Below are positions 3,122 through 61,300 of a DNA stretch of 64,000 nt, in pieces (the first letter of the stretch is position 1; every line of letters starts with the position of its first letter). The stretch lies in contig NW_025767227.1 in assembly GCF_003918875.1 (NCBI RefSeq), positions 434,001 through 498,000 on the forward strand, written 5' to 3'. The stretch is from Haliotis rubra (lineage: Eukaryota). Under the pieces are notes generated by a model. It worked only from the letters and a program-made list of their open reading frames with translations. It was not told where the DNA came from and did not search any database. The position numbers and the translations under genes are program-made.

Positions 3122-4699
3122 ACAAAAAGACGTGAAAAAATGGCACTTCCGGGTACCGACGAAAACGTTCAACGTTCAGGTGTTAGAGAGCTGGTCGGCG
3201 CGGTGTCATGAGACTGTGCCTGGATGAGTTATACAAGCCAAACGAGGTCAGGTACCTCAATAGGCTGGCGCCATAAAACATTCGTCCGTGCTTGTATATA
3301 CAGCGACACACGGACATCTCGGTCACGTTACACACTCATCTCTTACATTTGCGCGTTTATACGACCGAGAATACATTATTGCATTATCTCTTGAATATGA
3401 AAACTGATATCAAACTGGTACAGTTACAGATTGGACAATTCCTGAGGCAAAACTGTTCGCGACGGTTTGAGGAGCACTGTAGGTTACCACGACATCCAGT
3501 GACCTTGCTTCACGTCACCGCCAGGCGCGCCTCGAACAGTATATTATTGTGTTGCAATAGGCTTTGTGACGCACTATAACATTGTTGTGCTGTCATGTGC
3601 TCCGGAGCAACCTTCTATAGAACATTTCCGGGATGAGATGAATAGACCCCAACGACAGGATCAGAACTAGTCGACTAAGGCAAGCGGCCAATCTTTATTT
3701 GACATTATCAACAACATCCTTTCGACTGTTTCCATCATCTGGTGTCTTCGACGCAATACAACAGGCTCGCCTACATCAAGGGGACTGTTTCGTCTCGCCT
3801 GGCGAGGCCTGCTCCCATTAGTTGTGTGAAGGTGTCAGAGAATGGGGTTTAATTTGCCACAGCATCAAAAGAGAAAATGAACAGTCTTTCTAATCAAAAG
3901 TTTTGATTTATGTTCATGAATTGTTAGAATTGAACTATCGACTCAGTTTTAATTGCCCATCAGTTTACATTAATGCACATTGGAGCTTACCGCCTGGGTG
4001 TCTTCAAAACGGAGAGTGTGTACCAGTAAATCTCGATTCTCTGTAAACGCCTGTTGATATTGCCTCACATAGTTGAACCACCCACCATAACCTGCTGCAA
4101 CAGCAAGAAAAACGCATTTCATGAACTTTATAGCCACCTGCCAATAGCAACCAAATAACAAATCTTATGAACGTCACGGTGAAACCACCCGTCACAACCA
4201 AAGCAAGAAACAACTAAGTTCATGAACGTCACGGTTACACCATCCGTCACAACCAGCTGCACTGACTTGGGGTATTACACAAGACTCTTGTTCTCACAGG
4301 ATATCCTTCGAATGACACATAAATCTGCCATTGGAAACAATTCGTCTATTCCATTTTTACCTGTACACTGAAAGTTCCGAGAATAAAAACATATCGCGTC
4401 ATCCGAGCTAACCTGTATATTTAGTTCACAATTAAAAATATCAGCATCTTAGAAAGTGTTGATGCCATCATTCGTATTCAGATTTGTTCTGATGACAAAA
4501 CTATTAACGAATAAAGCAAGTAAATTTTCAACGTTTCGCTGTCAGTAAGAATTAATGTCCTATTGTACAACATTGGTGAAACATTCCAAAACTAAATTTA
4601 CACAAAGCCGTAAGTCAAAGGAGAACCTCATATATATTGTATTGTTTCAAATTATTCCAAGATCAATACAATACAATCCTCATGATTCAAGCACAATCT

Positions 4700-9033: not shown

Positions 9034-12000
9034 ATGGAAGGCCAGCAGTGAGTATGCACACCTCAGTAGCTTCAGTTAATGCCTTGTTTTTAACCACCTA
9101 ACACCATTCGCGACAATAACTGGGTTGTGCAGATGTTATCGGAGTACGCCCCCATAGAAGTGCACTCGGCTTCTCGCGGACAAGCATATGGTAGAGCTAG
9201 TCAAAGGGAGGTAATTATTGCGTTTACTTTGGGCAGATTAGTCGTACATAATAGGCTTTGGACGGCATTAAGAAATGATTTACATAAAAGCTGAGAAAAG
9301 GATGTCAAGTTTTTTATTGTGAGTAACGCGACGTTTCATGAAGGACTAAAGATATTCTCCGAAACGTCCAGTTCCTCTAAATAAAGAACATGGCATCCTT
9401 AATTCCCACCTTTTAACATTTAGTATAAGCGTATATTAAAAAAAACAAACCCAAAAACAACAACAACAACAACAACAAACAACAAAAAACAACCACAGTA
9501 ACGCATCAGTTATGAAATATAATAAACAGGACTACGAAATATTCTGAAACTGATGCAATCGAAACTGGCCATACTTCTCACGTAACAGTGATCGATAGAG
9601 GGACGTATCCTTGCTTGCTTTGGAAGTGGACGAGGCTGTCCATCCGATCCCCTTTCTGTTTTTGCGAATAGAGTCGGATATTTAACCAAATATTGACCGG
9701 TAGAATATGACTCGTGCCAGTCTCGGTGTCCGACAGATATTTCCATTGAAAATGCAAATCATATCCTGTGAAAGGCTTGAGATAGTAAAGATAGCGTGTC
9801 AGTTTTCTGTAACCCGAAGTAAAATCACGGTTTTAAAAATAGCGCACAGTTACAGCTAGTATAAATTGTATGACAGTCGCATACAAAAGTGACAGTCAAG
9901 GTTTCATTGAATTTCGTTTTTTAAACGATATTTATTATCTCGGCATAGATCACGAGCTTCATGCACGCTATCGTAAAGTAGCGATCTTTTCCGATTGCAT
10001 ACTTGACATACATATTAAAATCACGGGTAAGAAGTAGACAACGTTACCTTTATTATGTCGGTAAAAGTACAGCATACTTAACTTTTCTCACACACGAAAT
10101 AACTGAAAGTGGCGTTAAACCCTACTCATTCTTCTTAGAGGGGCCGTGGGTAATCCAGTTATTAAAGCGTTCGGTCGTCACGCCGAAGGCCCGAGTTCGA
10201 TTCTCTACAGGATACAATGTGCGAAGCCCATTTCTGGTGTGCCCCGCCGTGATATTGCTGGGATATTGCTAAAAAAAGCGTCGTAAATGCATAGTCACTT
10301 ACTCACTCATTCTTTTCAGAACTCCTGAGATTCTGGACTACCGGAATGAGAATGGTAATGGATGGTCCTTCTACAAAAATGACGGCGTCCTCCGGAGAAT
10401 TGGTTCAACCCCTGAGGATGACATTGAAATGATCCGAAAAGTTCAGAAACTCGAACTTAGGGACGATGACGTCTTGATTGCGGCATATCCCAAATGTGGT
10501 AAGAACCAAAGTTTCACAATTTTCTGTATAAAGCAGCAATAGATTGTGTGAATAAATGTGGTGGGGAATTCTGCAATAAGCACATAAGAACAAAATGATT
10601 TACAAAAAATATTTTTAAAAATCAATTTGTAAAGTTCATATTTACAAACATTTGCAACTTTTGTAAAGATCCCCTGTTATAATATGTCTCCGATGTCTGT
10701 GTGAGGAGGAGTGTTATAGACTTCACTATTTCAAACATTTTTTGTTCTATTGAGGGAGTTCATCATGTATTGTAGAAATAGATAATGGTTCTTGGGCGGT
10801 GGGGTAGCCTAGTGGTTAAAGCGTTGGCTCGTCACGCCGAAGACCCGGGTTCGATTCCCCACATGGGTACAATGTGTGAAGGCCATTTCTGGGGTCCCCT
10901 GTCGTGATCTTGCTGGAGTATTGCTAAAAGGCCTATAACCATACTCACTCACTCATAATGGTTCTTGCATGTGGCATACATGTCTTTATGCATGAAAACT
11001 ACCGTATATTAATATTATTATCCATTTATGCTTTATGTGACGCGTGAAGAAACAACATACATATTGTCTTTGAATACATTTTTAAAAGTAGGGATAATGT
11101 ATAATGTTTCTGTTCGCTTACCTCTGTGATTAGGTAGGAACTACTTCTATAAATTCGTATAATTTCATTCAGTCTGCATGTATGACCCTTGTTATATGTG
11201 GCAAACCTTGATATTGACTACATGGGAACGAAGGGAGGCAATTCCGTACATTGTAGTCTGACCTTAGGTAAGTGTGTTTGTTCAAAATTGCCACTGTTCA
11301 ACAAGCAGAAAATGGGTACCCGGTGGGATGTCATATCCTTTTTACCTTCTGGCGCCTCACAGGCAGCTTGGGTTATCCAGCTAATACTGTCTATGATCCC
11401 TGTTAGCGCTTTGAGAACACTTTGTGCACTGTGCAGATCATGCTGACCAAAACACAAATACCATTCAAACAGGTGTAATTCACTCACAAACTCACACGAT
11501 GCTGTCTGTTCCGATCCCTACAGGTACCCACTGGTTGTGGGAAATAGTCACCATGCTCAGGGCCGGTAACTCTGAGTACCAGAAGGAGGCCAAGGAGGTG
11601 GCCATGTTGGGGATGCCAAAATATGAGCGGGCTGATGAACTCCCCTCCCCGAGAGTTCTGAACTCACATCTACATTTCCGTCATCTGCCGGAGAAGCTGG
11701 CGGAGAAGAATATAAAAACAATCTTCATCATGAGAAATCCCAAAGATGTCAGCGTATCCTATTATAGCCATGTCAACGGAATGAAAGCGAGTTTTAGGTT
11801 TGACGGGACGTATTCAGAATATCTGGAACTATTTCTGGAAGGGAAAGGTGAATGATATTTAGATGCTGTTAAGTCATACCAAGCCCCATGGTAAAACAGA
11901 CCTGTGTGGTATAAAATGCTTATCAACGAGCATTTATAAACTAGTGCTCAAAAGAAAGTATACAGTGTGCTTGACGAAACTTGAAAAGAAAGCAAAAGCA

Positions 12001-18410: not shown

Positions 18411-21400
18411 ATGGAAGGTCAGCGGTAAGTACTTGTTCCTCTCGTTATTCGGCGTGCATACAGAGCTGGCAAGGTGTCTATTCCATCAAATTGTAACAGC
18501 AGCTTATCTTTCACTATTGTATTGATGTCATTTATTTAAATGCGTCTATCACTCAATTAAATGCACACAATGACGTCCCTTGCAACGGCAAGAATCTACA
18601 AGTCGAAAGCCAGGTTCAACATAATATTGATCCTCGGTTTGTAGGCACCATAGTCACTTTTGTAAGTAGCAACAAGCAGTTTTCTCACACAAGTGATTCT
18701 AAACCGTCCTTTAAAGCGGCGTTAAATCAAACCAAACAAGTAATTCTTCATAGAACTCCCGAGATTCTGGACTACCGGAATGCGAATGGTCATGGATGGT
18801 CCTTTTATAAAAATGACGGCCTTCTCCGGCCGATTGACACCACCCCTGAAGATGACATGGAAATGATCAGAAAAGTTCAGAAACTGGAACTTAGGGACGA
18901 TGACGTCTTCATTGCGGCATATCCTAAATGTGGTAAGAACCCAATAATGTACTCAGTCTGTATAAATGAATAAGCTATTATGTGTAAAAATGATTTTGAA
19001 ATCTCAAGGGAGCAGATGGTTCCATGAGACGAGAAACTCATGACCACACACCAGGCAACGAAAACATGCAACAGTGCCGAATCTTACCTGATTTGTGATC
19101 GCCGCACTGTGTAATTCATGCTGACAAAAAAACAACAACAAAACAAATACCATTCAAACAGGCGTAAACCCCAGTTAACTCACCTATTCAGATCATGCTG
19201 TCTATTCCGATCCCTCCAGGTACCCACTGGTTGTGGGAAATCGTCTCCATGCTCAAGGCCGGTAACTCTGAGTACAACAAGATGGCTAAGGAAATCGCCA
19301 TGTTGGGGATGCCGAAGACTGAGCGGGCTGATGAACTCCCTTCCCCGAGAGTTCTAAATTCCCATCTATTTTTCCGTCATCTGCCGGAAAAGCTGGTGGA
19401 GAAGAAAATAAAAACAATCTTCATCATGCGAAATCCAAAAGATGTCAGCGTATCCCTTTTTAACCATCTTAACGGAATGAAACTGAGTGTTAGGTTTGAC
19501 GGGACGTATTCAGAACTTCTGGATCTGTTTCTGGAAGGAAAAGGTGAGTGATGCTGTTACGTCATACCAAGCCTCAAGGTCATATGGCATAATGGCATAA
19601 TATGCCTATCACCGTATGTTTACCTGTTTATATTAATCTGAAGACATAATAACTGCTGTATCTAATTAACATGTAACAAATAGCAGATATAATGCTTTAA
19701 ATGTCATTGTCTTCAACAGTTAAGCCTGATATAGTTCACCATGTCTCGTTTAAGGCGCAAGAGTTCGCTGTGAAATTTGTGACCGTGGGTTTAAAACCCG
19801 GCCATGTTTATAGGCTTGCTTGCACCATATCCGTCCTCGTGGGTTTCAACAAGGTTGAAACATCTGGGACCTGCATTACTTCGGGCTTCCCTCCATCCTT
19901 AAGCTAGGACGCCGTGAGACGACTGATGTGCCTTTTCAAAGCAGCATTAAAGTCTCACTCGTCCCAGCATGACTCTGCCAGTCGTTTTGTGGTTCTCAAT
20001 GCAAACATTTACACTTAAATTTCTTAAATGACATCCTTTAGCGTAACTCAAAGTGAGTTTTCTGTTACCTGACAGAAAACATGTTCAAAGAAACAATAGT
20101 AGCCTTTCCTTGTGCATCTGCATTTGCATCTCGATTGAACGCCAAAGTCTAGAGTAACGCCTAGCCTCTGGGAGTGTGTACCTGTCATGCAAACAGGCAA
20201 CTTCATCACACTGAGGCACCCGTGAAGAGCCACCTCGTCGTGGTGGGTGCTGGGTAACGCTAAGCGCTCTTCAGCCCCCCGTTGTGGACCCGGGGGTATA
20301 TTTGGTCCACCAACCCGTTTGCCGTGGGTTGCGCCCCTGTGTCGGTGGAGGACGGGAGTCTGGTGATTGAGGGTACTGGTTCCAGGACGGGTGGTTGAAT
20401 GGGCCCGGTTCAACCAATCGGCTGGTCATGCCATGCCCTGTGCATTGTATCTCATATTGCACAAATGTTATTTCACTAAATGATCCTGTGTTTGGTAATG
20501 GCCAAATTAATTCACGGAGCTTATTATTGATTTCAAAATTCAACAAATGTTAATTTTGCCTAGAGTCGTATGCCCAGAAGGCGGTGGCTCATGGGCAAAT
20601 TCAGTGGAATAATTATTCTGTTAGTTCTTCTGCTGGAGTATATCATCTGAGTATCCTTGGTGCTGCAAGTCTGAAACCCCCTTGTTTTTAGCATTGTCTT
20701 CATGATACTCCGTGGTAGGTGGGGAGCTCAGATGATGAACTATACTACATTAGCTATGGCTTACACAACCCCCCTTAAAAGAAACAAACGTCAGCCTGAC
20801 AGTGCTGATGATGAACCTCGACCGTCCAACTCAATCGAATATTGGCCACGATTTCTCGTTATTGAGACTCTTGACAAATCACATATTAAATTGAACCCTT
20901 TTGCCGTATCAAAAGGTATACATGGTATCGCAGGTGAGGTCAGAAATATCAAACGATTGCGTTCAGGTTCTCTACTTATAGAATGTAGCAGAAAACAACA
21001 ATCCACCAACCTGATGTCTACTGAGTTGCCCGTTGGAGTTCCGGTCTCGGTTTCCCCGCACAGGACTCTGAACACAAGCAAAGGGATTGTCAGAGATTGA
21101 GATCGATTGTTTGCTGATATGACTGAACTTGATATGGTGTCAGAAATGAAAGAGCAAGGAGTGACTTTTGTTAAAAGATTTATAACCCGAATAAACTCTG
21201 AAACAAAACCAACTAATACTTATCTCTTCCATTTTTCTTCTCCAACCATTCCAAAATCAATTAGAGCAGGATATTGCAATATCAGTGTTGATACTTATAT
21301 CCCCAATCCACTAAGATGTTTCAAATGCCAGAAGTACGGACACGGTGCCAATAACTGTACTAACTTGGTAACATGAGCTCATTGCAGTGAGAAAACTCAT

Positions 21401-24400
21401 GTTACTGAGGATTGCAATAATACCATTAAAAAATGCGTCAACTGCTCTGGGACACATCCTTCTTTCTCTAAACACTGTCCAATCTGGAAGGAACAAATGG
21501 AGATCAATAAAATTAAATTTACACAGAATATCAGTTTTGCTGATGCTAAGAAACGTCTTGTTCCCACACCGGAACCAAATACATCTTATGCCTCAATTAC
21601 GAGAGCACCCTCTGTCGTCAGTCACAAAGCAACTGTATCCACTTCATCAACACTGTGCCAAACTGATCTGACATGGGTGGATACAGAAAAACCTTAACAC
21701 TCAGACTGCTGAATCAATTCCAAAAACAGTTCAAGTTCAGTCACGGTCATCTACTTAAGAACAATCATCGTCATTATCATCACAGCCCATACCAAAACAT
21801 CAATCACAAAATAATGGGAATCATCTTACCAAAAATAAAATCAAAGCCAGAAATGATTTGCAAAAATGTCAAAGTAGCAGAGCCTCCAAAGGTTCAAATG
21901 ACACAATCCAACTTTTTAATAAGTTCGGATCCTTAGAGGACATGGATGTGTCCGAAAATATCCAAATTAGGGCACATAGCTTGTCGCCCTCAAGAAAAGC
22001 AAGGGGTAGACCCCCAATAGGCCCTCCAAAGAAGTAGTTTCTTCACATATTATTCAGTGGAATTGCAGAGGCCGAAAGACTAATCTTAATGAACTGCACC
22101 TATTAGTCCAAGACTTTAAACCTTCAGCATTCTGCTTGCAAGAAACGTATCTCAAGCAGACAAATACTTTTAACTTCCGTCACTATAATGCATATCATTA
22201 TTTTTCTCCACCTGGTGATAGGGCCACTGGAGGATCATCAATCCTTGTAAGGCATGATGTTATTCATAGCCCTGTTACACGCAAAACTAATCTTCAAGCA
22301 GTTGCAGTGCGAATTACTTTGAACATTACACTTACTCTGTGTTCATTGTACATTCCACCTTCATCAACTCTTCAGCAGGCTGATCTACAAACTCTCTACG
22401 ATCAACTACCCAAGCCTTGTATATTCATGGGTGATTTGAATGGGCACAACCCTCTCTGGGGTGGTGTGACCACAAACGCAAAAGGACAAGTTTAGGAGGA
22501 TTTAATTTCAAATAATAATTTACGTATATATAATGATGGTACAAAATCATATTTACATCCTGGCACAGGAACATATTCAGCTCTTGATATGTCAATAACT
22601 GACTCCAACTTACTGAATGAATTTGAATGGTCAGTTCACGATGACCTCTGTGGAAGTGACCATTTTCCTACTTTACTAAAACCTGTAACCCCATCTGATA
22701 TTCCTTCATCATCAAGATGGAATTTTAGAAAGGCTAACTGGCCTCTTTATGAAATGCTGTGTGTTACGAAACTTAAACCTGAATTTTTTGTTGATGTTCC
22801 TGATGCTATCAAATGTTTTTCTGATGAACTGAACATCATAGCTGATGAGTGTACACCAAAGTCATCTGCAATTCCACATATTCGAAAACCTTGGTTCAAC
22901 GATGAGTGCAAACAAGCTAGGAAGGCAAGGAAAAAAGCAGAACATTATTTCCGTCGCCACCCTATGGTGCATAATTTAAATAAATTCAAAATTATGAATG
23001 CTTAAGCGCGGCGTACCTTCAAACAGAGGTGTGGAACATGGTCCAGAGAATTAAAGGTAAAGGTACTAAATCTAGCATCCATCATCATAAATATGGACAT
23101 CAATTGCTAACCGATAATCAGATATTGCAAATAAACTGGGTGAAACTCTTGCTAAACATTCTTCCTCTTCTAATTATGTGCCTAAATTCCAACAATATAA
23201 AAAGCAACAAGAAAAGAAATCTATTAATTTCAATTCAGATAATGGGGAAGATTATAATGAACTATTTTCTATTCATGAGCTCCATACTGCTCTTGAACAA
23301 GCTCACCATACTGTTACAGGAGCTGATAACATACATTATCAACTCCTGAAGCACTTACAAGAATCCTGTCTAGAGACTTTTAAAAATATTTTTGATGATA
23401 TTTGGACGTCAGGTAAATTTCCTCCCTCATGGCGTGACGCTATAGTAGTACCAATACCTAAAACTAAATTTGCTTCCTGAACGTAGGATCATATGTGGTA
23501 CACTTGATAATGTACTGTCCTGAAATGGGTTCCAATACTCACATGCTCCTTTCTGAATGTGGGCTGAAAGGACCTGCTATTCTTTTTTTACAATGTGGGT
23601 TTGAACATCTTGACGTAATCTGCCTGAATGTGGGTTTGGATGCTTTGATGTGCTGTGCCTAAATGTACGCTAAAACTCTTTGAAATGCTGCTCCATGCAA
23701 ATGAGTTGAAATGCTCTGACCTACAGTTTCCTGAATACGGGTTTCAATGTTCTGACATGGTAGAAATTCTGTGACGTGATGCTGTCAAATATGGACTTAA
23801 ACGATGTTGCCTGACTGTAGTTTAGATGTTCTGACTTGTTGTTGATGGACTGTAGGTCTAAACGCTCCCAGGGTCTGCTAAGTGAATGTTGACTTAAATG
23901 CTTGAGTTTCTTTATGAATGTGGATTTAACTGCTCTGGAATGTTGCTATCTGAATATGGTGCTCCTACGTGTACAATGTTCTGACGTTCCGCTGGCTGAA
24001 TGTAGATATTAATCCTCTGAAGAGCTGCTCCTGAAAGTCGGTTTAGATGCATGCACATGATGCTGTGTGAATGTGGGTTCAGATGCCCTGGAGTGCTACT
24101 GTGTGTATATCGGTTCAGATGCTTTGATCCGTTACGGTGTGTCTGAATGGGTCTTTCACGATTTAAAAAAATAAATAAATTCTACACGCGTCTTTTAACA
24201 CTCTAACGTATTTCTCTGTCAGTATGTTTTTAAGCAATCTGACGAGCTGGTCCCGGAATTTTGGTTTGAACTGATTCTTAAATACGATGTATGTCGTGCA
24301 CCTATGTGGACGTTTGTGCGAATGAAAGAAGATTTTAATTCTCTGACGAGCTACTGCTTATACAAAATTCCTTCCAATGTTTCAGTGGGCATTGGTGATT

Positions 24401-25891
24401 ATGTCAACTACGTGAAGGATTGGCTGCAAGTGGAACAGGACAACCCGGACTTGCCAATGTTAACATTGTTTTATGAAAACTTGAAAAAGGTTTGTACTTG
24501 ACCTAGATGCCTTATGTCGACAAACTGGTCATAATGGTTTGCTGGGTACATGGTTTGAAGATATGAATGTAAACACTGGGGGTTCATCACAGTAATTGAT
24601 GACGTTCAGCTGGATACGTTTATTTAACTTGAAATTCGCAGATAACTGCGTCATGTGTATGTCATCTGATGAGTTGCTAATTGATATGATGCGTGTGATA
24701 TTGCCTATAACACCCGTATCAAGTGCATTAACATCGATCATCAATTTCTTTCTCATTTTAAATGCTATGAAACATATGTGCATATTTCAGTTAGTCTGTC
24801 AGTCGTTATGTGCTGCTGTCGCAGGGTTTGAAGTAAAGTGGCGAGTGTTTTGTTAGTTTGTCTTTCTCGATTAATAATCTGGTAATATTTGGAAGGTATA
24901 TAATTAATTCCTTGTAGGTATATCATTATATATGTTTAGTTAACTGTACTGGGGCATATTTTGCTATTTAAACATACGTTTACTTTTAGTATACTGGACT
25001 GTCCATAATTCTGTATTTCTTCAACGACAATTGTACTGCATATAGTGCAAAGGTAAGGTGTTTCTACAACCCTTCTTCGGGATGACAATCCTTATTAGGT
25101 TGATTTTAGGATCCTGTTAAGAACATCAGAACGGTTGCCGAGTTCCTTGGAGTGTCTGTCAGCGATGAACTATGTGAGCAAATAGCAGAAGCGTGCAGCT
25201 TTAAGAAGCTGAGGGCTGCAAACACTGAGGTCAAGGAGCACACCAGAAAGCAATCCGACGTCTGGAAGGAAGGTCACCAAGGACTGTATAGGAAAGGTGA
25301 GATTGTCCTTTAAACCTGTTTGCCATTGTTTTCTACGTGCCGTTCATACATTAAATCGTGTTGGGCCAAGTACTATTACTGTTACTTGTTGTGAGAAGTA
25401 CGTGGTTTAGAGTAGGTCCAATTATGATGTTATTTGTTGTAGGACACACGTGCGTCAGAATAGTATAACATCTGTAGCTATTTAAGGATGCAATCATACA
25501 TATCTTACTGAAGGGCTTATTCATGGAAACATGGATGTATAGGTCAAACTAATGTACAGTATAATTTGCCACAAAATACAAATAACTTGATCTGAGGGTA
25601 ACCTAAGAGGCAGTGTTCAGATGAAGCTTTGTGACACTTACAAATTACAGAACTGTTTCTGTGTTACTTATTTCAGGAATTACTCATGAATGACGTACAT
25701 GAAGTAGTTAGTAATGTAATTACTTATTGGCCTGTATTTTATTACTAACCTTTGAACATAAGAATTAATGTGCTATTTCAGGTGAAGTTGGGGATTGGAA
25801 GAACTGGATAACAGTTGCCCAGAACGAAAACTTTGATGATGTCATTGAGCGCCGATTTGAAGGAACGGGCATTGTATTCACGTATGAATAA
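18411..25891 (+). CDS. Cytosolic sulfotransferase (SULT1-like), paralog 2, 305 aa
   Basis: Exons 18411-18424, 18754-18932, 19220-19543, 24386-24489, 25110-25296, 25782-25891; intact frame and SULT motifs. Confidence 0.93.
20215..20273 (+). ncRNA. Predicted HDV-like self-cleaving ribozyme at the LINE 5' end
   Basis: P1 GGCACCC/GGGUGCU, P2 UGAAGAGC/GCUCUUCA, P3 ACC/GGU, L3 UCGUCGU, J4/2 GCUAA (candidate catalytic C20260). Confidence 0.75.
20215..23468 (+). mobile_element. I-group (Nimb/I/Ingi-like) LINE, 5'-intact, 3'-truncated, inactivated
   Basis: ORF1 with IPNPLRCFKCQKYGH and three zinc knuckles (~20756-22037, internal stops). ORF2 APE endonuclease (QWNCRG, QET, GDLNGH, SDHFP) and RT start (GADNI..QLLK, WRDAIVVPIPK), with stops and frameshifts. 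Confidence 0.9.
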
Positions 25892-26156
25892 CCGTTATAT
25901 GGTGATCATGGGGTTGTGGACACGAAACACCAAACCTTATCCAGGATATATCTATAAATGCTAACCTCTATGTTGTAAGTTCATGTCAAACCTCAGTGTT
26001 TAACCTCTGACCCTTTCAAGTTATTTTGCTAACACTGAAATGGAGTTAAAGTTAGGAAGAATCAATCAATGTTGTTACACGAGTGAGTGAGTTGTGTTTG
26101 TGTTGTTCCATGAACCGTTATCCGACTTATATACCATCAAAACAACTGAGGGAAAT

Positions 26157-48136: not shown

Positions 48137-51100
48137 ATGGAGGGTCAGCGGTAAGTTCCTCTCATATTCTGTGTCAGTGCAGTGCTTTTTTCGCAGCCAT
48201 CTTGTTTTTAAATGAGGCGAACTGGTCGTGACTGTACATGTGTTTGCTGCTAATCACAGGGGAAGTCATCGTTAAATTAAACATGGGCGCAAACAGAGCA
48301 AGGTACGCCTTCCATCAAACTGCACCCTCAGCTTGTCTTTCAATATTGTATTGATGTCATTTATTTAAATGCGACTGCCATTCAACTAAATGCACATTAT
48401 TACGATTCTTGCGAGGGCTAGAATCCATGTATTGATTGATTTGAAGGCACCATTGTCTTTTTTGTAAGTAGCACCAAGCAGTTTCAACACACAAGTGATT
48501 CTAAACCATCATCCAAACCCAAATAAATGATTCTTTGTAGAACTCCTGAGATTCTGGACTACCGGAATAAGAATGGTCATGGATGGTCCTTCTTCAAACA
48601 TGACGGCATCCTCCGGTCGATTAACACCACTCCTGAGGATGTCACGGAAATGACCCGAAAAGTTCAGAAACTCGAACTGAGAGATGATGACGTCTTGGTT
48701 GCAGCATATCCTAAATGTGGTAAGAGTGAGTGAGTGAGTGAGTTGAGTTTTACGCCGCACTCAGCAATATTCCAGCTATATGGCGGGGGTCTGTCAATAA
48801 TCGAGTCTGGACCAGACAATCCAGTGACCAACAGCATGAGCATCGATCTGTGCAATTGGAAACCGATGACATGTGTCAACCAAGTAAGCGAGCCTGACCA
48901 CCCGATCCCGTTAGTCGCCTCTTACGACAAGCATGGGTTACTGAAGATCAATATTCTAACCCGGACCTTCACGGGTTAAGATGTGGTAAGAAGCTGGATA
49001 ATGTACTGTATGAAGAAGTAATCTATTCTGTGAATGAATGTTTTTGAAATCTGCAGTAAGCAGATGGTTCCATGAGACTAGAAAATCATGATCATACGTC
49101 AAGCAACGAGCTCAAACATCTACCAACCTTGCCTAGTCGTACCTGACTAGTGAGCTGTGCACTGTGTAGATCATGCTTGCCGAAACACAAATACCATTCA
49201 AACAGGATTTGATCCCAGTTCACTCACGTACTCACAGTGTGCTATTCCAATCCTTCCAGGTACCCACTGGTTGTGGGAAATCGTCACCATGCTCAAGGCC
49301 GGTAACTCTGAGTACAACAAGAAGGCTAAGGAAATCGCCATGTTGGGGATGCCGAAGTTTGAGCGGGCTGATGAACTCCCCTCCCCGAGAGTTCTAAACT
49401 CACATCTAAATTTCCGTCATCTGCCGGAAAAGCTGGTGGAAAAGAAGATACGAACAATCTTCATCATGCGAAATCCCAAAGATGTCAGCGTATCCCTTTT
49501 TAACCATCTTAACGGAATAAAATTGAGTTTTAGGTTTGACGGGACGTATTCAGAATTTCTGGATCTGTTTCTGGAAGGAAAAGGTGAGTAATACGCAGAT
49601 GCTGTAACCCGCCTAACCCGCGCAGCCACCGCGACTTCCACAAAAAATGGAAGTCGGACAGCTGGTAGGCTTGACTGTTTGCTTTGTGTACCCCTCTGAT
49701 AAGTGTACATTGGCACGGCTTCCATGAATTTTATTGCGATCAGGTGCCTGATTGTGTGCCGGCGTGTGTGGGTTCGAATCCCGGATGGGACTCAACCCCC
49801 CAAAAGTACTAGAATCTTTATTTTACTGAGAAAGTGTAATCCCAAATATAACTTATGTTACATTTGACCACTTTCTAAATGGCATGGTGTATCCATAGCT
49901 TTCGGACGTTATGTTATGTAAAATTCCATCGATTTTTCAGTGGCCAGTGGTGATTATGTCGACTACGTAAAGGATTGGCTGCAAGTGAAACAGGACAACC
50001 CGGACTTGCCAATGTTGACGTTGTTTTATGAAAACTTGAAAAAGGTTTGTACTTGACCTAGATGCCTTATGTCGAGAAGATGGTTATAATGGTTTGCTGG
50101 TTTGAAGATCTGAATGTAAACACTGGTGGTCCATCACAGTAATTGGTAACGCTCAGATGGAACATATAAATAACTCGAAATTTACATATATCTGCGTCAT
50201 GTGCATGACATCTGTTGAGTTGCTCATTGATATGATGCGTGTGATATTGCCTATAATACCGTATCAAGTGCAGCAAGATCGATTATCAATTTCCTGATCA
50301 TTTTAAATAACATGAGTACATATTTTCGTCTGTCTGCCAGTTTTCACGTGTATCCTTATATACTTAGCAGCAAAAAAAACGTCAGTACGAATTCAAAATT
50401 AGATAGACACTGTAATCAAATCATTACAGAAATGGACATAATAAGCGGATCAAAAACATGTTTTGTGTACTATATTTTGAGACATCAATGAATAACTCAG
50501 CACATTTTCAAGACATTACGTGAACGTTTGCAGTCCATTCAGACCCTCGACTTCAGTATCTAGTGGGACCACCACGAGCGGCAAAAACTGCAGCACAGCG
50601 TCTATGCATGGAGTGCACCAATCGATTGATGAAGGCCATTGGCACCTGGAACCACACTCTGAGAAAGGCCTGGCGCAATAAATCGGCTGTGTGCGGCCTT
50701 GGTATGACATTATTCTGTCTCCTCTGAATTTCATCCCAAAGATGTTTAGTTGGGTTTAAGGGCTAAGGACTAAGGGCTGGCCACTGCATACTGTTGACAC
50801 ATGTAGGAAGTCCTGTGTAGCTCTGGTAGTAAGGGCCCGGGCGTTATCATGCTGGAAAATGTTGTTCCGGTGACGTGCGTAATGTGGTATGACGTGGGGT
50901 CTGAGAGCTTGGTCGATGTAGCGCACCGCTGTGATGCCGCCTCCTCTCCCTGGACCAAGGTTCTGGAACACCACAGGACCCACTCTCTGATTCAGGCCTA
51001 TTCCATCCCATACCATGATGCTTGCACCTCCCCATGAGTCTCTTTCCATAACACATTGGTCTGAGTAACGCTGGCCACGTCGTCGCAATATTCTTGTTCT

Positions 51101-54000
51101 GCCATCTGCAGTTTATACGCAGTACCGACCTCATCTGTGAACAGAACAGTTCTCCATTGCCTGTATCGCCAGTTTGGGTGTTGTAGAGCAAACTGTAGAC
51201 GTTCACGTCGATGACGAAGGGTGAGGATAGGTCCACGGTAAGGTCTACGGCAATGGAGGTTCCCGCTGTTAAGACGTCGGCGTACTGTATCAGTACTGAT
51301 TGGTCTTCCGTGTGTTCCCACTGTCTGGCGTGCTGTTTCGGATGCCTGCATGAAGGGATTCTGTACACAACATGGCGGTCTTGTCGTCTTGTGGTCACCC
51401 TTGGTCTGTACGGGGGCGATCATTTGTGGTGTTGGTGGCCCGGAAACGTTGTTGCAGCCTGTAGATGGTCCGAAGTGATTGGCAACGGCTTGTGCAGTGT
51501 GGCCAGCTTCAAGTCTTCCTAGCGCCTGGTTCCTCTGAGCTTTCGTGAGTCGCGTTATCCTGCTGACGTTGTAATGTGAATGTTTCAACCAGGTTTGGGG
51601 GTGCAATTTATAGGGTTGGTCCTTGTGAACAGCACGTGCAGCATGAGTTGCATGAAAAACACGGAGAACACCATACCATCTCCGAGATCAGGTTGCGGTT
51701 TCGAGACCATTTCCTCGGTTCCATTCTGAGTTTGGGAAGGAATGTCTTTGCTCAGATAAAGTTGGAGATGTTGTCAAAAATATACAATCAAAACATTAAA
51801 TGAGTTTACAGTTATCCGTTTCTGCAAAGGAACATTCCAAAGTGACGTTCTTTTGCTGCTTAGTATACATCTTTAGTTAACTGTCCTGGGGCTTATTTGT
51901 TATTTAAACTTTCGTTTACCTATAGTATACTGGACTTTCCATAATTCTATGTTTCTTCAGCGGCAATAGTACTGTTAATTACTAAGGGTAAGCGCGCTTT
52001 ACATTTGTTCGGGATGACAACGCTTATTTGGTTGATTTTAGGATCCTGTTAAAAACATCAAAACGGTTGCCGACTTCATTGGAGTCCCTGTCAGTGATGA
52101 ACTATGTGAGCAAATAGCAGAAGCGTGCAGCTTTAAGAAGCTCAAATCGGCAGACACTGAAGTCAAAGAGCACACCACTAATCCGTTGAGCATGTGGAAG
52201 GAAGGTCGCCAAGGAGTTTACAGAAAAGGTGAGATTGTCATAGTTTTCCACGCGTCCTTCATACATTAAATAAGGAGCAAGGATAGTGTAGGTCCAAGTA
52301 CTAATACTGTAACTTGTTAGACACACGTCGGTTAGAGTAGGGCCAATTATAATGTTGCTGTATGTGAGACATACGTGGGTTAGAAGTTTAACAAATATTT
52401 TATGACGGTACATGTTATTGAAAACTGGAAATATCACAGACTAGTTACCACGTTCAACTATGATGTTACTTGATGTGAGACACACGTGGGTTAGAGTAGG
52501 TCCAGTTAGGACGTTTCTGGATGTGAGACACACGTGGGTTTGAGTAGGTCCAGTTATGATGTTACGTGTTGTGAGACACACGTGGGTTAGAGTAGGTCTA
52601 GTTATGATGTTACGTGTTGTGAGACACACGTGTGTTATAGTAGGTCCAGTTATGATGTTACTTGTTGTGAGACACATGGGTTAGAGTAGGTCCAGTTATG
52701 ATGTTACTTGTTGTGAGACACACGCGGGTTAGAGTAGGTCTAGTTATGATGTTACTTGTGAGACACACGTGGGTTATAGTAGGTCTAGTTATGATGTTAC
52801 TTGTTGTGAGACACACGTGGTTATAGTAGGTCTAGTTATGATGTTACTTGTTGTGAGACACACGATGGTTAGAGTAGGTCTAGTTATGATGTTACTTGTT
52901 GTGAGACACACGTGGGTTATAGTAGGTCTAGTTCTGATGTTACTTGATGTGAAACACACGTGGGTTAGAGTAGGTCCAGTTATGATGTTACTTGTTGTGA
53001 GACACACGATGGTTAGAGTAGGTCCAGTTATGATGTTACGTGTTGTGAGACACACGTGGGTTATAGTAGGTCTAGTTATGATGTTACGTGTTGTGAGACA
53101 CACGTGTGTTATAGTAGGTCTAGTTATGATGTTACTTGTTGTGAGACACACATGGGTTATAGTAGGCCTAGTTATGATGTTACTTGATGTGAGACAGACG
53201 TGGGTTAGAGTAGGTCCAGTTATGACGTTACTTGATGTGAGACACACGTGGGTCAAAGTAGGTCCAGTTATGATGTTACGTGTTGTGAGACACACGGGGG
53301 TTAGATTAGGTCCAGTTATGACGTTACTTGATGTGAGACACACGTGGGTTAGATTAGGTCCAGTTATGATGTTACGTGTTGTGAGACACACGATGGTTAG
53401 AGTAGGTCCAATTATGATGTTACTTGATGTGAGACACAAGTGGGTTAGAGTAGGTCCAGTTATGACGTTACTTGATGTGAGACACAAGTGGTTTAGAGTA
53501 GGTCAATTGATGACGTTACTTGATGTGAGACACACGTGGGTTAGATTAGGTCTAGTTATGACGTTACTTCTTGTGAGGACACACGTGGCTTAGAATTGCA
53601 TAAAATCTGTAGATATTTTGAGGTCGCAGTCATACATTTCTTACGGAAGGGCTCATGAATACATATGAATGTATATTACAAACTGATTTTCAGTAGAGTT
53701 TGACACAAAATATAAATAACTTGATCTGAGGAAGTTTTGTGACACTGACAAATTACAGAATTGTTTCTGTGTTACTTACTTCAGGAATTACTCATGAATG
53801 ACGTACTTAAGGAGCTAGTAATGTATTACTTACTGACCTTAAATAGTATCACTCACCTTTGAAATATATGAAATATATGTGCTGTTTCAGGTGAAGTAGG
53901 GGATTGGAAGAACTGGATAACAGTTGCCCAGAACGAAATATTTGACAACGTCATTGAGCGCCGATTTGAAGGAACAGGCATTGTATTCACGTATGAATAA
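48137..54000 (+). CDS. Cytosolic sulfotransferase (SULT1-like), paralog 5, 305 aa
   Basis: Exons 48137-48150, 48541-48719, 49260-49583, 49941-50044, 52042-52228, 53891-54000; intact. Confidence 0.93.
48726..48980 (-). mobile_element. Short non-tRNA retroposon (family C)
   Basis: 11-bp TSD atgtggtaaga, (actc)n tail, 3' end shared with family A, no recognisable A/B boxes; degenerate relatives near 43434-43600 and 45325-45455. Confidence 0.85.
49603..49895. mobile_element. Rearranged copy of the tRNA-containing mini-LTR-like element
   Basis: 49603-49730 matches 365-490 in the same orientation; 49765-49895 matches 216-340 inverted; B box gggttcgaatccc. Confidence 0.65.
50361..51865 (-). mobile_element. 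Near full-length Tc1 transposon with frameshifted transposase
   Basis: TIRs tacttagcagcaaaa / ttttgctgcttagta, TA TSD; motifs WRTVLFTDE, IMVWDGI, FQHDNAR. Confidence 0.92.
52280..53595. repeat. 48-bp minisatellite in intron 5 of paralog 5
   Basis: Unit gtgagacacacgtgggttagagtaggtccagttatgatgttacttgtt; 16-aa periodic ORFs. Confidence 0.93.
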
Positions 54001-58314: not shown

Positions 58315-61300
58315 ATGGAAGGTGAACGGTAAGTACTTGTTCCTCTCATTATTCTGTGTCAGTGCAGTGCTTTTTCCGCAGCCATCTTGTTTCTAAATGA
58401 GGAGAATTGGTCACGACTGTACATGTGTATGCTGCTAATCACAGGGAAGTAATCGTTAAATTTAAACGTAGGCGGGAACCGAGCACGGTATGCATTCCTT
58501 GAAATTACAGCAGCAACTTGTTTTTCACTATTGTACTGATGTTCATTTATTTAAATGCGACTAACACTCAGCTAAATGCACATATTACGTCTATTGGGAG
58601 GGCTAGAATCCATTAAGTCCAAACCGAAGTTCGACATTATATTGATCCTTGGTTTGTGGGCAAAATAGTCATTTTGTAAGTAGCACCAAGCAGTTTCCTC
58701 ACACAAGTGATTCTAAACCGTCATTCAAACCCAACCAGTGATTCTTTGTAGAACTCCCGAGATTCTGGACTACCGGAATGAGAATGGTCACGGATGGTTC
58801 TTCTTCAAAAATGACGGCCTTCTTCGGACGATTGTTACAACCCCTGAAGCTAATATGGAAATGCTCCGTAAAGTTCAGAGACTGAAACTTAGGGACGATG
58901 ACGTCTTGATTGCAGCTTATCCCAAATGCGGTAAGAACCCAAGCTAAACAATGTACTGTACAAATGAGTAGTCTGTGAATGAATGGAGGTTTTAACTTCC
59001 CAGTAAATAGGTGGTTCTTTGACACAAGAAACTCATGATCTGGTGTGGACCCATCAGTCTACCAACTTGGCTTAATTGTGAGCTTAACTGATTTGTGAGC
59101 TGTGCACTGTGTAGATCATGCTGACCGAAACACAAATACCATTCAAACAGGCGTAAGCCCCAATTCACCCACTTACTCACACAATGCTGTCTATTCCGAT
59201 CCCTCCAGGTACCCACTGGTTGTGGGAAATCGTCTCCATGCTCAGGGCCGGTAACTCTGAGTACAACAAGAAGGCTAAGGACATCGCCATGTTGGGGGCA
59301 CCGGAATCAGTGCGGGTTGATGAACTCCCCTCTCCAAGAGTTCTGAACTCACATCTAAATTTCCGTCATCTGCCCGAGAAGATGGTGGAGAAGAAAATAA
59401 AAACAATCTTGATCCTGCGAAATCCCAAAGATGTCAGCGTATCTTATTATAACCATCTCAACGGAGTAAACATGAGTTTTAGGTTTGACGGCACGTATTC
59501 AGAATTTCTGGATCTGTATCTGGAAGGAAAAGGTGAGTGATACATAGATGCTGTTACGTTATCTTAAGCTTTATGGTAGTAACCATGGCGTCGGGTAGTA
59601 TTTATGCTTATTTATATGTTTATATCAATCTGAAGGCATAATTGCTATATTTAATTAACATTTACAGAAAATAGCAGATATAATACTTGTCCTTGTCTTC
59701 AACAGTAAAACTTAATCTACACAGTGACAGGTTTAAGGTGCCACAATTCGCTGTGAAATTTGTGACCGTGAGCTTGAAACCGGTCATGTTTATAGTCTAG
59801 CTAGCACCATACCCGTCCTCGAGGTTTTCATCAGGGTGGAAACATCTGGGACCTGTATCACTTCGGGCTTTCGTCCCTCGTTTAAGAAGGAAGCCGTGAG
59901 TCGACTGATGTGGCTTTCAAACTCTCCCATGCAGTTAATGACCAGATTCCAAAATCCGTTTGATGCCTCTCAATGCGACCATTTACACGTAACATTTCAT
60001 AAATGACAACATATTTAGCCCAACTCTAAAGGGGGTTACTGTTACCTGAGGGTAAATATGTCAAAAGAAACAATTTATGCCCTTCTGCGGTTATCCTCGA
60101 TTCTACAACGCCTAGCTTCTCGAAGTGTGCAATTTTCATGCAAACAGCAACTTACAGCAACAAGTTAAAACGAGAGCCCAAGTGAGATGGGATATTCAAG
60201 TACTAGTACATAGCATCTCCATTGAGACTACATCGTCCCCTATTTCGGCATCTCGGTAAGAAGCTGACCAGATGTGGGTTTACCGAAATGCTCAGTCTGA
60301 GGTATAGAGGGTGGGGCTGCTGGTGTTGGGACCTTCTGTCACTTTCTAAATCCATCAGATATATGTGCTGTTGTCTTTGTGTGGGATGGAACCTTCTGAT
60401 GAACTGCTGGCTGAATATTGGTTCACATATTTAGACAAGTTGTTCCGTAAATGTGCTTCAAAGTTCAATTGAATAATTGAATGATCTGACTTGATGCTTC
60501 CTGGATGCAGGATCATATGTACCGATTTGTTGTACTGTCCCAAGATGGGTTTCATTACTAACATCCCCTTCCTGAATGTAGGGTTTAAAGGCCCGTGTGT
60601 ACTATAGTGACAATGTGAGTTTAAACGCTCTGAGTTATTCTGCCTGAATGTGAGTTTACATGCCCTCATGCCCTACTTCATGAATATGAGTTTACATCCT
60701 CTGATGTATAGTTTACTGAATGGGGTTTTCAATGTTCTGACATGCTGCATGCATGCTGTTTTAAACTCTGTGACCTGCTGCTGCCAAATATGGCTTAATC
60801 GAGGTTGCTTGACTGAAGGTGGTATGGATATTTATCTGACTTGTTGCTGTCGGACTGTAGGTATAAACACTCCCAGGGTCTGCTCCGTGAATTTGGACTT
60901 AAAGGCTCGTGTTTCTTTCTGAATGTGGTTTTGACTGCTCTGATATGTTGCTGTCTGAACATAGGCTTTTAACTCTCTCTCCCGTAATTCCCTGTCAGAA
61001 TAGGCTTTTAGGAAATCTAGCAAACTTTCATGCTGCTCCCGGAATGTGGACTTGAACTGCTTCTTTAAAACGGTGGGTGCCGCTTTCCTGTGTAAACGCT
61101 GGCTGATTGTAGATATTAGTTCTCCATTAGCACTGCTCATGGAAGTCGGCTTAGATGCATACAAATGCTACTGTGTGAATGTCGGTTCAGATGCCCTGAA
61201 GTGCTGCTGTGTGAATGTAGGTTCAGACACGTTGAAGTGGTACTGTGTGAATGTAGGTTCAGATGCCCTGAAGTGCTACTGTGTGAATGTAGGTTCAGAT

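What the first reader, a model, noticed from the sequence alone, without database searches (positions are those of the whole stretch)
20215..20273. Compact HDV-like ribozyme heading a LINE, in sense orientation inside a SULT intron
Seen: 59 nt fit the nested double pseudoknot. P1 GGCACCC (20215-21)/GGGUGCU (20245-51) with G1.U wobble; P2 UGAAGAGC/GCUCUUCA; P3 ACC/GGU; L3 UCGUCGU; GG after P1; almost no P4; J4/2 GCUAA with C20260. Intron homology with paralog 6 (~60125-60153) stops just upstream, so the predicted cleavage site coincides with the element's 5' end. Known: HDV-like ribozymes process 5' ends of R2, RTE and L1Tc/ingi elements; from memory, the GCCACCUCnnCGUGGUG...GCUAAGCGC pattern matches the L1Tc/ingi 77-nt hallmark. 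Inference: a near-minimal ribozyme in an animal I-group LINE that, if active, would cut paralog 2 pre-mRNA in intron 3, as the intronic CPEB3 ribozyme does.
Basis: partly seen in the sequence, partly recalled or inferred. Interest (0 to 1): 0.85.

Follow-up and report, generated by a model that had tools for sequence, protein, structure and literature searches.

The report
P4-less HDV-like ribozyme heading abalone LINE
The 59 bases are a copy of a very small self-cutting RNA (a P4-less HDV-like ribozyme with the same core as the 'theta' ribozymes of gut phages). It forms the exact first bases of a LINE retrotransposon family with about 1000 copies in an abalone genome, but this intronic copy carries a rare change in the catalytic core and is probably weakened.

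Summary

It is not a chance fit:
- More than 60 genomic copies examined begin at G20215's equivalent, with unrelated DNA upstream.
- The 32-nt core occurs 1006 times in this 1.38-Gb genome.
- Two Haliotis LINE lineages whose ORF1 proteins are under 50% identical carry heads that differ by compensatory changes: P1 pair 6-32 is C-G versus U-A, and P2 pair 17-50 is C-G versus A-U.
- The same core, with no P4, turned up in over 120 metagenome contigs and 32 phage contigs. There P1 and P2 covary freely, and 8 of 12 loci checked place the cleavage site at a tRNA 3' end. That context is the published signature of theta (minimal HDV-like) ribozymes, which cleave in vitro.

The best reading is a theta-type minimal ribozyme that trims the 5' end of an I/Nimb-like LINE (CCHC ORF1, APE-RT-RNase H ORF2). 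HDV-like ribozymes at LINE 5' ends are known. A P4-less one in an animal retrotransposon is not reported in the papers I could search.

The claimed L1Tc likeness is not supported. The element does lie in sense inside an intron of SULT paralog 2. However, this copy has C-to-G at 20237, which breaks P1.1 and is seen in about 1% of copies, and its LINE is truncated. Cutting of the SULT pre-mRNA is therefore doubtful.

The parts
20215..20273 (+). P4-less HDV-like (theta-type) ribozyme, 59 nt. The predicted cleavage site is immediately 5' of G20215.
   Evidence: Sequence read. Rfam RF02682 aligns over its full length, 27.2 bits. The class core matches once in the window against 0.00 expected. Pair counts.
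20215..20221 (+). P1 5' strand, GGCACCC. G20215 is both the cleavage-site nucleotide and the first base of the LINE.
   Evidence: All 32 copies and nearly all of 30 more start here with unrelated upstream DNA. Pair 6-32 is C-G in type I and U-A in type II, with a U.G intermediate in L073.
20223..20231 (+). P2 5' strand, UGAAGAGCC. It pairs with 20264 and 20266-20273.
   Evidence: Pair 17-50 is C-G in type I and A-U in type II. Single copies carry compensated changes: L004 at 14-54 and L044 at 11-57, both A-U to G-C.
20232..20244 (+). P3 (ACC/GGU) enclosing L3 (UCGUCGU). L3 positions 20236-20237 form P1.1 with 20252-20253.
   Evidence: P3 and the L3 letters U21, C22, C25, G26 and U27 are invariant in alignment A1. 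They were fixed by the search pattern for the 31 non-Haliotis rows.
20237..20237 (+). G in place of the family's C (equivalent to HDV C22). It turns the P1.1 pair C23-G38 into G.G.
   Evidence: C in 98 of the first 100 listed of 1006 core copies, G in 1. C in 103 of 104 metagenome/phage members although left free in the pattern. It is the only unpaired P1.1 cell.
20245..20253 (+). P1 3' strand, GGGUGCU, followed by the two G of P1.1.
20254..20263 (+). GUAAC, then GCUAA (J4/2). There is no P4 between them. C20260 is the predicted catalytic cytosine (HDV C75).
   Evidence: Rfam alignment shows 1 nt where the model has 15. The identical string GGGUAACGCUAA occurs in tRNA-adjacent phage ribozymes.
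20264..20273 (+). P2 3' strand: G50, bulged C51, then GCUCUUCA.
   Evidence: Position 51 varies freely (C, A, T) among copies. The same GCGC arrangement occurs in metagenome members m130 and m155.
20284..20310 (+). Hairpin directly after the ribozyme (GUGGACC ... GGUCCAC), part of the conserved head.
   Evidence: Present in type I and type II heads. Type II has GUGGAA ... UUCCAC, a C-to-A change matched by G-to-U. This is my reading of the alignment, not a pair the tool predicted.
20314..20366 (+). Block nearly invariant between type I and type II heads. Its function is unknown (candidates: promoter, protein binding, translation).
   Evidence: The first 170 nt or so are 95-99% conserved while the element bodies are only 70-80% alike.
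20215..23468 (+). The LINE copy: head, broken ORF1 (zf-CCHC at 21107-21376), APE endonuclease (22136-22495) and the start of RT. The 3' part is missing.
   Evidence: Pfam hits. Homology to other copies ends near 23465. Paralog 6 intron homology resumes at 23471.
19195..19551 (+). Exon of SULT paralog 2 (motif GTHWLWEIV) upstream of the insertion.
24367..24496 (+). Next stretch conserved among the SULT paralogs (presumed exon) downstream of the insertion. The last exon, with GDWK, lies near 25750-26072.

Best explanation
The 59 nt are one copy of a minimal, P4-less HDV-like self-cleaving ribozyme. It is the 5'-terminal module of an abundant non-LTR retrotransposon family in an abalone (Haliotis) genome.

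Inferred mechanism, by analogy with R2, RTE and L1Tc:
1. The element is transcribed from upstream DNA, or from its own head.
2. The nascent RNA folds into the nested double pseudoknot (P1/P2, P3/P1.1).
3. C46 (20260) acts as the general acid, and the chain is cut just 5' of G1.
4. The LINE RNA is left with a defined 5'-hydroxyl end that still carries the whole ribozyme.
5. Full-length reverse transcription then copies that end, so every full-length insertion starts at G1.

What is shown: the fold fits, the class membership of the core, the covariation, and the coincidence of nt 1 with the family's 5' boundary.
What is inferred: the cleavage itself and its role in retrotransposition.

The copy in the window is an old, truncated insertion with a broken P1.1 pair. 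It probably cleaves poorly or not at all.
For: (1) 5' boundary. Genome homology to window 20100-20500 starts at query position 110-116, that is at 20215, in all 40 scored places out of 3263 candidates. All 32 copies in those loci start at GGCACCC with unrelated upstream DNA, as do nearly all of the 30 further Rfam-model hits. In a second species' DNA run, 57 contigs carry unlike sequence before 20215.

(2) Abundance. There are 1006 exact matches of the 32-nt core, and 0 for the reversed control.

(3) Covariation between lineages. H. rufescens (L046) and H. cracherodii (L233) carry a type II head about 685 nt upstream of an ORF1 that is only 42-46% identical to the query ORF1. This head also occurs in the window's genome. 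It has 6-32 U-A and 17-50 A-U instead of C-G and C-G.

(4) Class membership. The pattern ACCTCNNCGTGGT-N7-GGGNAACGCTAA gives more than 120 metagenome contigs and 32 viral contigs. Of 104 distinct sequences, 93 have a perfect 7-bp P1 partner 7-16 nt upstream, against about 4% expected by chance (my calculation). A P2 partner follows directly after GCUAA. In 8 of 12 loci checked, nt 1 lies within 1 nt of a tRNA 3' end. That is the published context of theta ribozymes, which lack P4 and self-cleave in vitro (PMC10879173).

(5) Pair counts. 99.4% of cells are paired, and the covariation score is 0.783 against 0.176 in shuffles (0 of 500 reach it). Pair 17-50, which was not used as a filter, is paired in 36 of 38 rows with four pair types.
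Against: - No cleavage assay and no RNA 5'-end data exist. The sequencing runs available were contigs only.
- The Rfam score is below the gathering threshold, and the MFE fold is not better than shuffles (z = -0.18). Both are expected for a pseudoknot without P4, but they give no independent support.
- The P1 covariation in the metagenome set is partly circular, because I filtered those rows for P1 pairing and fished them with the abalone core.
- Within the type I family, variation looks like neutral decay. There are 59 single mutants at position 31 and no compensated U7-A31 copy.
- The whole first 170 nt or so are conserved, not only the ribozyme. A uniform 5' end could therefore also reflect an internal promoter.
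- ORF1 relatives in spiders, two other assemblies, H. asinina L045 and vent metagenome contigs show no such head.
Confidence: 0.85

Rival explanations
1. Dead relic in this locus. The family ribozyme is real, but the window copy is catalytically inactive or very slow and has no effect on SULT paralog 2. This rivals only the first reader's inference about the host gene.
For: - C-to-G at 20237 puts a G.G mismatch in the P1.1 pair next to P1.
- That position is C in 103 of 104 class members and in 98 of 100 sampled copies.
- The LINE copy has broken ORFs and lacks its 3' half.
- The base before the cleavage site is A, which the HDV literature ranks below U and C (abstract of PMC1874588).
Against: - CPEB3 (one G-C pair plus U-U) and L1TcRz (1 bp) cleave with a weak P1.1.
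- One P1.1 pair, C22-G39, remains here, and every other core position is intact.
Confidence: 0.65
2. The conserved head is mainly an internal promoter or protein-binding 5' UTR module, and G1 is a transcription start. The ribozyme-like fold would not be used for 5' processing.
For: - Conservation extends over about 170 nt, including a hairpin and an invariant 53-nt block.
- A roughly 68-70-bp 5' head shared by Nimb and RTE LINEs and by mollusc SINEs, Haliotis included, was read as a LINE promoter by Matetovici et al. 2016 (PMC4758252).
- The L1Tc Pr77 is both a promoter and a ribozyme.
Against: - The first 59 nt match, base for base in the core, a ribozyme class that cleaves in vitro.
- The compensatory changes between type I and type II fall on predicted pairs.
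- A promoter role does not exclude cleavage.
Confidence: 0.08
3. Chance resemblance or an assembly contaminant of phage origin.
For: - A generic HDV descriptor hits shuffled windows 0.28 times each.
- The core is otherwise typical of gut phages.
Against: - There are 1006 copies dispersed over many contigs, always at the start of a LINE with animal-type ORFs.
- The head is present in at least three other Haliotis assemblies or runs.
- This copy is flanked on both sides by SULT intron sequence.
Confidence: 0.01

Closest known systems
Minimal HDV-like ribozymes (drz-Mtgn) and theta ribozymes of Caudoviricetes gut phages (Riccitelli 2014; Kienbeck et al. 2024, PMC10879173)
   Same: - No P4, and a size of about 55-60 nt.
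- Identical core ACCUC-NN-CGUGGU / N7 / GGGUAAC GCUAA.
- A 7-bp P1 starting with G.
- 8-10 nt between P1 and P3, serving as the P2 5' strand.
- The P2 3' strand follows directly after GCUAA, often with one bulged nucleotide.
   Different: - Host and role differ. Theta ribozymes sit at tRNA 3' ends in phage genomes and are proposed to trim tRNA trailers.
- This one is the first 59 nt of an animal LINE present in about 1000 genomic copies.
- The published search reported almost none outside phages, but its eukaryote set did not include molluscs.
HDV-like ribozymes at the 5' ends of non-LTR retrotransposons: R2 (Eickbush 2010), and RTE, Baggins, SART, R4 and R6 (Ruminski 2011; recalled, paper not held), and L1Tc (PMC3185411)
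   Same: - The ribozyme is the extreme 5' end of the element, so cleavage would define the 5' terminus.
- It is shared among otherwise diverged element lineages, as Pr77 is among L1Tc/ingi elements.
   Different: - The ones I could check have a P4 and are longer: L1TcRz is 77 nt, and the R2 ribozyme occupies about 184 nt.
- Here P4 is absent.
- The sequence is not like Pr77, whose first 15 nt differ.
CPEB3 intronic ribozyme
   Same: An HDV-like fold lying in sense inside an intron of a protein-coding gene.
   Different: - CPEB3 is a single-copy element conserved among mammals, and it has a P4.
- This is a recent transposon insertion in one of six paralogs, absent at the matching site of paralog 6.
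- It also carries a core mutation.
'LP' (LINE promoter) 5' head of Nimb-17_LMi, I-3_DR, RTE-9_CPB and mollusc LP-SINEs (Matetovici et al. 2016, PMC4758252)
   Same: - A module of about 68-70 bp at the extreme 5' end.
- It is shared by I/Nimb-type LINEs and reported in Haliotis.
- Homology among carriers is restricted to that head.
   Different: - It was interpreted as a promoter, and no ribozyme was proposed.
- The sequences are not in the held text, so identity with this ribozyme is an untested lead.
- In this genome about 93 of 100 sampled copies continue with the LINE head, not with a SINE body.

Membership tests
HDV-like (delta-like) self-cleaving ribozymes | Nested double pseudoknot: P1 (7 bp) crossing P2, with P3 (3 bp) nested inside | tested here: met
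   Direct reading, same register as Rfam RF02682, 99.4% of cells paired in A1.
HDV-like (delta-like) self-cleaving ribozymes | G at +1 paired to U or C at the base of P1 | tested here: met
   G20215.U20251. In A1 the pair 1-37 is GU in 23 rows, GC in 13 and AU in 2.
HDV-like (delta-like) self-cleaving ribozymes | Catalytic cytosine as first base of J4/2, followed by purine-rich J4/2 (C-U/G-A-A) | tested here: met
   C20260-U-A-A, invariant in all copies and class members seen.
HDV-like (delta-like) self-cleaving ribozymes | L3 with U...CG (the reverse wobble U20.G25 of HDV) and two C pairing with GG after P1 (P1.1) | tested here: inconclusive
   The family majority, UCCUCGU plus GG, meets it. 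The window copy, UCGUCGU, keeps U21, C25 and G26 and one P1.1 pair but has G.G at the other.
HDV-like (delta-like) self-cleaving ribozymes | Site-specific self-cleavage giving 2',3'-cyclic phosphate and 5'-OH | not testable with these tools
   Only contigs of sequencing runs were available.
Rfam RF02682 (HDV-F-prausnitzii) and RF00094 (HDV ribozyme) | Score at or above the curated gathering threshold (44 and 50 bits) | tested here: not met
   27.2 and 17.7 bits, and 0 hits at gathering thresholds. The deficit comes from the missing P4.
Minimal / theta HDV-like ribozymes | P4 domain absent, with an otherwise complete core | tested here: met
   One nucleotide stands in place of P4. The core is identical to more than 150 metagenome and viral sequences.
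Minimal / theta HDV-like ribozymes | Cleavage site adjacent to a tRNA 3' end in a Caudoviricetes genome | tested here: not met
   Here nt 1 is the 5' end of a LINE in an animal genome. The phage relatives do meet it, in 8 of 12 loci.
LINE 5'-terminal processing ribozymes (R2 / RTE / L1Tc type) | First nucleotide of the ribozyme is the first nucleotide of full-length element copies | tested here: met
   Also seen in another species' DNA run.
LINE 5'-terminal processing ribozymes (R2 / RTE / L1Tc type) | Cleavage of a co-transcript in vitro or in vivo | not testable with these tools
   No raw RNA reads were available.
L1Tc/ingi Pr77 hallmark (L1TcRz) | Sequence homology to the 77-nt Pr77, a P4 present, and a 1-bp P1.1 | tested here: not met
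   The Pr77 5' primer sequence CCCTGGCTCAGCCGG differs from GGCACCCGUGAAGAG. L1TcRz has a P4. The full Pr77 sequence is not in the held texts, so only the first 15 nt were compared.
CPEB3-type conserved intronic ribozyme | Orthologous intronic position conserved across species or paralogs | tested here: not met
   The insertion is present in paralog 2 only. Paralog 6 intron homology flanks it at 20203 and 23471.

The most novel reading that the evidence does not exclude
The theta-type, P4-less HDV-like ribozyme is not a phage speciality. It would be a portable 60-nt 5'-end module of animal retrotransposons. It would also be the long-unexplained 'LP' head of about 68-70 bp shared by Nimb and RTE LINEs and by LP-SINEs in molluscs, insects, fish and turtles, which was read in 2016 as a promoter. 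That would make many SINEs and LINEs ribozyme-headed. It would also raise the question of whether phages and animal retroelements share this core by descent, by transfer, or by convergence on the smallest workable HDV fold.
Probability: 0.3. Interest if true: 0.8.

Novelty: new variant of a known kind. Interest (0 to 1): 0.6.

Why it matters
HDV-like ribozymes are known to trim the 5' ends of some LINEs. P4-less 'minimal' versions are known from phages, where their discoverers reported them as almost confined to Caudoviricetes.

This finding joins the two. It is a natural 59-nt ribozyme of the phage type, used about 1000 times as the first bases of an animal LINE and kept through compensatory changes in two LINE lineages of Haliotis. 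Three consequences follow.
- It gives a eukaryotic home and a plausible function to the minimal class.
- It offers a testable reinterpretation of conserved LINE and SINE 5' 'promoter' heads in molluscs.
- It means that sense-oriented intronic copies with an intact core could cut host pre-mRNAs.

For the SULT gene in this window the effect is probably small, because this copy's core is mutated.

Tried and rejected
- Rfam at gathering thresholds gave no hit in the window.
- MFE folding gave no signal (z = -0.18). It cannot see pseudoknots.
- My generic HDV descriptor is too permissive to prove anything alone: 0.28 hits per shuffled window.
- RNA evidence: all runs offered were stored as contigs, so no 5' ends could be mapped. 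The coverage starting at 20215 only confirms the repeat boundary.
- Two other species (coded C and D) show a different P2 3' strand, GCUCGCCG. I could not obtain their P2 5' strand. That variant is absent from the window's genome.
- Within-family compensation: the double mutant U7-A31 has 0 copies, and the position-31 variants are single mutants. Type I variation therefore looks like neutral decay.
- Ribozyme heads upstream of ORF1 relatives: none in H. asinina L045, a spider, two ENA assemblies or hydrothermal-vent metagenome contigs.
- L1Tc likeness: only the first 15 nt of Pr77 could be compared, and they differ. Ruminski 2011 and the 2015 review are not held.
- LP-SINE link: the paper's sequences are not in the text and no supplement is held. 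A sample of 100 copies showed no recurrent non-LINE continuation after the ribozyme. L038, which looked like a ribozyme-headed SINE, is a SINE nested in a LINE head, because the same SINE in the window (about 48720-48985) has no such head.
- I did not build a covariance model from the phage set. Those sequences were fished with the abalone core, so a match would be circular.
- The LINE clade (Nimb, I or other) was not resolved beyond domain architecture.
Full report
**What is there.** Window 20215-20273 (+) reads GGCACCCGUGAAGAGCCACCUCGUCGUGGUGGGUGCUGGGUAACGCUAAGCGCUCUUCA. I number G20215 as nt 1. The pairings are these:
- P1: 1-7 with 31-37, with G1.U37.
- P3: 18-20 with 28-30.
- L3: 21-27.
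- P1.1: 22-23 with 39-38.
- GUAAC at 40-44, then GCUAA at 45-49, with C46 = 20260.
- P2: 9-16 with 59-52, plus an innermost pair 17-50, with nt 51 bulged.

Rfam's HDV-F-prausnitzii model aligns end to end in that register, with 1 nt where the model has a 15-nt P4. It scores 27.2 bits against a threshold of 44. At gathering thresholds nothing in the window is reported.

**Is it more than chance?**
- The generic fit alone is not. A descriptor I wrote (7-bp P1, 3-bp P3, GG, C[U/G]AA, P2 of at least 5 bp, P4 of 0-120 nt) finds only this site in both strands of the window, but it also finds 0.28 sites per dinucleotide-shuffled window. MFE folding shows nothing.
- The specific core is. CGTGGTGNGTGCTGGGTAACGCTAA with up to 3 mismatches occurs once in the window against 0.00 expected.
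- The 32-nt core occurs 1006 times in the genome against 0 for the reversed control.

**It is the first base of a LINE.**
- The window belongs to a 1.38-Gb assembly of 2855 contigs. ORF1 relatives are named Haliotis, so this is an abalone.
- Homology of 20100-20500 to the rest of the genome begins at query 110-116, that is at 20215, in every scored place.
- All 32 copies in those loci begin at GGCACCC with unrelated DNA before it. So do nearly all of 30 further sites found with the Rfam model.
- In a DNA-like run of a second species, 57 contigs carry unlike sequence before 20215.
- Downstream lie a CCHC ORF1 and an ORF2 with APE endonuclease, RT and RNase H. This is an I/Nimb/ingi-type architecture. 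I did not resolve the clade further.
- Every copy I looked at has broken ORFs.
- The window copy runs only to about 23468.

**Covariation.**
- H. rufescens (L046) and H. cracherodii (L233) carry a second head type (type II) about 685 nt upstream of an ORF1 that is 42-46% identical to the query ORF1. Six exact copies of type II also occur in the window's genome.
- Type II differs from type I at 6-32 (U-A for C-G) and at 17-50 (A-U for C-G). L073 has the U.G intermediate at 6-32.
- Two single type I copies carry compensated P2 changes: L004 at 14-54 and L044 at 11-57.
- Otherwise type I variation looks like neutral decay of dead copies.

**The class.**
- The pattern ACCTCNNCGTGGT-N7-GGGNAACGCTAA was taken from the abalone core, with P1 and two L3 positions left free.
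- Of 104 distinct sequences, 93 have a perfectly complementary 7-nt strand 7-16 nt upstream. About 4% would be expected by chance for the best of 39 positions (my calculation). Each also has a P2 partner directly after GCUAA.
- Position 23, left free in the pattern, is C in 103 of 104.
- In 8 of 12 loci checked, nt 1 lies within 1 nt of a tRNA 3' end, mostly tRNA-Met, in tRNA-rich stretches that include amber-suppressor tRNAs.
- That is the published signature of theta ribozymes. These are minimal HDV-like ribozymes that lack P4, self-cleave in vitro, and were reported as about 99% confined to Caudoviricetes. The eukaryote search set in that study was limited to 'complete' RefSeq eukaryotes, human and mouse.
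- On an alignment of 7 Haliotis and 31 metagenome/viral sequences, 99.4% of cells pair, and the covariation score is 0.783 against 0.176 in shuffles (0 of 500 reach it).
- Caveat: the 31 rows were filtered for P1 pairing. Pair 17-50 was not filtered, and it is paired in 36 of 38 rows with four pair types.

**Mechanism.** Shown: the fold fits, the class core matches, the covariation exists, and nt 1 is the element boundary. Inferred: the nascent element RNA cuts itself 5' of G1, as in R2, RTE and L1Tc. This frees it from upstream transcript and fixes the 5' end that reverse transcription then copies. The head is longer than the ribozyme. A hairpin (20284-20310) has a compensated change in type II, by my reading of the alignment. 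An almost invariant block (20314-20366) follows. These may serve transcription, translation of an uncapped RNA, or protein binding. This is unknown.

**This copy and the SULT gene.**
- Six SULT paralogs lie on the + strand.
- The LINE sits in sense between the paralog 2 exon at 19195-19551 and the next conserved stretch at about 24367. Paralog 6 intron homology stops at 20203 and resumes at 23471. The context claim is therefore right. I did not verify the intron number.
- 20237 is G where the family has C: 98 C, 1 G and 1 A among the first 100 listed copies. This turns the P1.1 pair next to P1 into G.G, the only unpaired P1.1 cell.
- CPEB3 and L1TcRz work with a weak P1.1, so residual activity is possible. 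I put it at roughly one in three.

**Known or new.**
- HDV-like ribozymes at LINE 5' ends are established: R2, L1Tc, and by recollection RTE, Baggins, SART, R4 and R6.
- P4-less ones are established in phages.
- I found no paper in the held library that links minimal or theta ribozymes to animal retrotransposons, to Haliotis or to Nimb elements.
- Matetovici et al. 2016 described a 68-70-bp 5' head shared by Nimb and RTE LINEs and by mollusc LP-SINEs, Haliotis included, and read it as a promoter. Whether that head is this ribozyme could not be tested here.
- The recalled similarity to L1Tc Pr77 is not supported.

**Verdict.** The ribozyme family is real and is a new variant of a known kind. 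This particular copy is a probably crippled relic.

Noticed in passing
window 20284-20310: Hairpin GUGGACC...GGUCCAC directly after the ribozyme. Type II heads have GUGGAA...UUCCAC, a compensated C-to-A / G-to-U change. This is my reading of the alignment.
   Followed up: partly
window 20314-20366: A 53-nt block almost invariant between type I and type II heads, although the element bodies are only 70-80% alike. No function is assigned.
   Followed up: partly
window 48720-48985; L038:1523-1800: A SINE that starts with (GAGT)n, the subject of another first-stage note. In L038 the same SINE lies nested right after a ribozyme head. In the window it has no such head and starts at an exon/intron border.
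   Followed up: partly
L046:552-608, 2214-2270, 4315-4371: Three type II ribozyme heads in the same orientation within 4 kb of H. rufescens DNA. Only the last lies at the usual distance from an ORF1.
   Followed up: no
L128:5440-8741: A contig filed as metagenome (WLWD01001407.1) has the same P4-less core, with P1 CCCGGGC/GCCUGGG, after a (GT)n run. It is followed on the same strand by a 285-aa ORF and an RVT_1 fragment. It looks like another eukaryotic LINE with a minimal ribozyme head. Related copies are L099, L108, L131 and L137.
   Followed up: partly
L079, L102, L104, L117, L129: Five contigs share one ribozyme (GUUCGGC ... GGGAAACGCUAA, 14 nt between P1 and P3) with near-identical flanks on both sides. 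No ORF of 100 aa or more occurs in L079. The nature of this repeat is unknown.
   Followed up: no
window 52450-53500 and 25380-25463: An 84-nt stretch of the paralog 2 intron matches about 20 overlapping places, spaced about 48 nt apart, in the paralog 5 intron. This is a minisatellite-like array.
   Followed up: no
window 11500-62700: Six sulfotransferase paralogs in tandem, all on the + strand. GTHWLWEIV exons lie at 11523, 19219, 32875, 41530, 49259 and 59208.
   Followed up: partly
L017:1120-1500 (minus strand) and L050: Copies in which the ribozyme head is joined after about nt 61 directly to RT-coding or other sequence. These are internal deletions or template switches that keep just the ribozyme.
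   Followed up: no
window 20215-20460, run X5: A peat metatranscriptome run holds a small share of the head's words.
   Followed up: no
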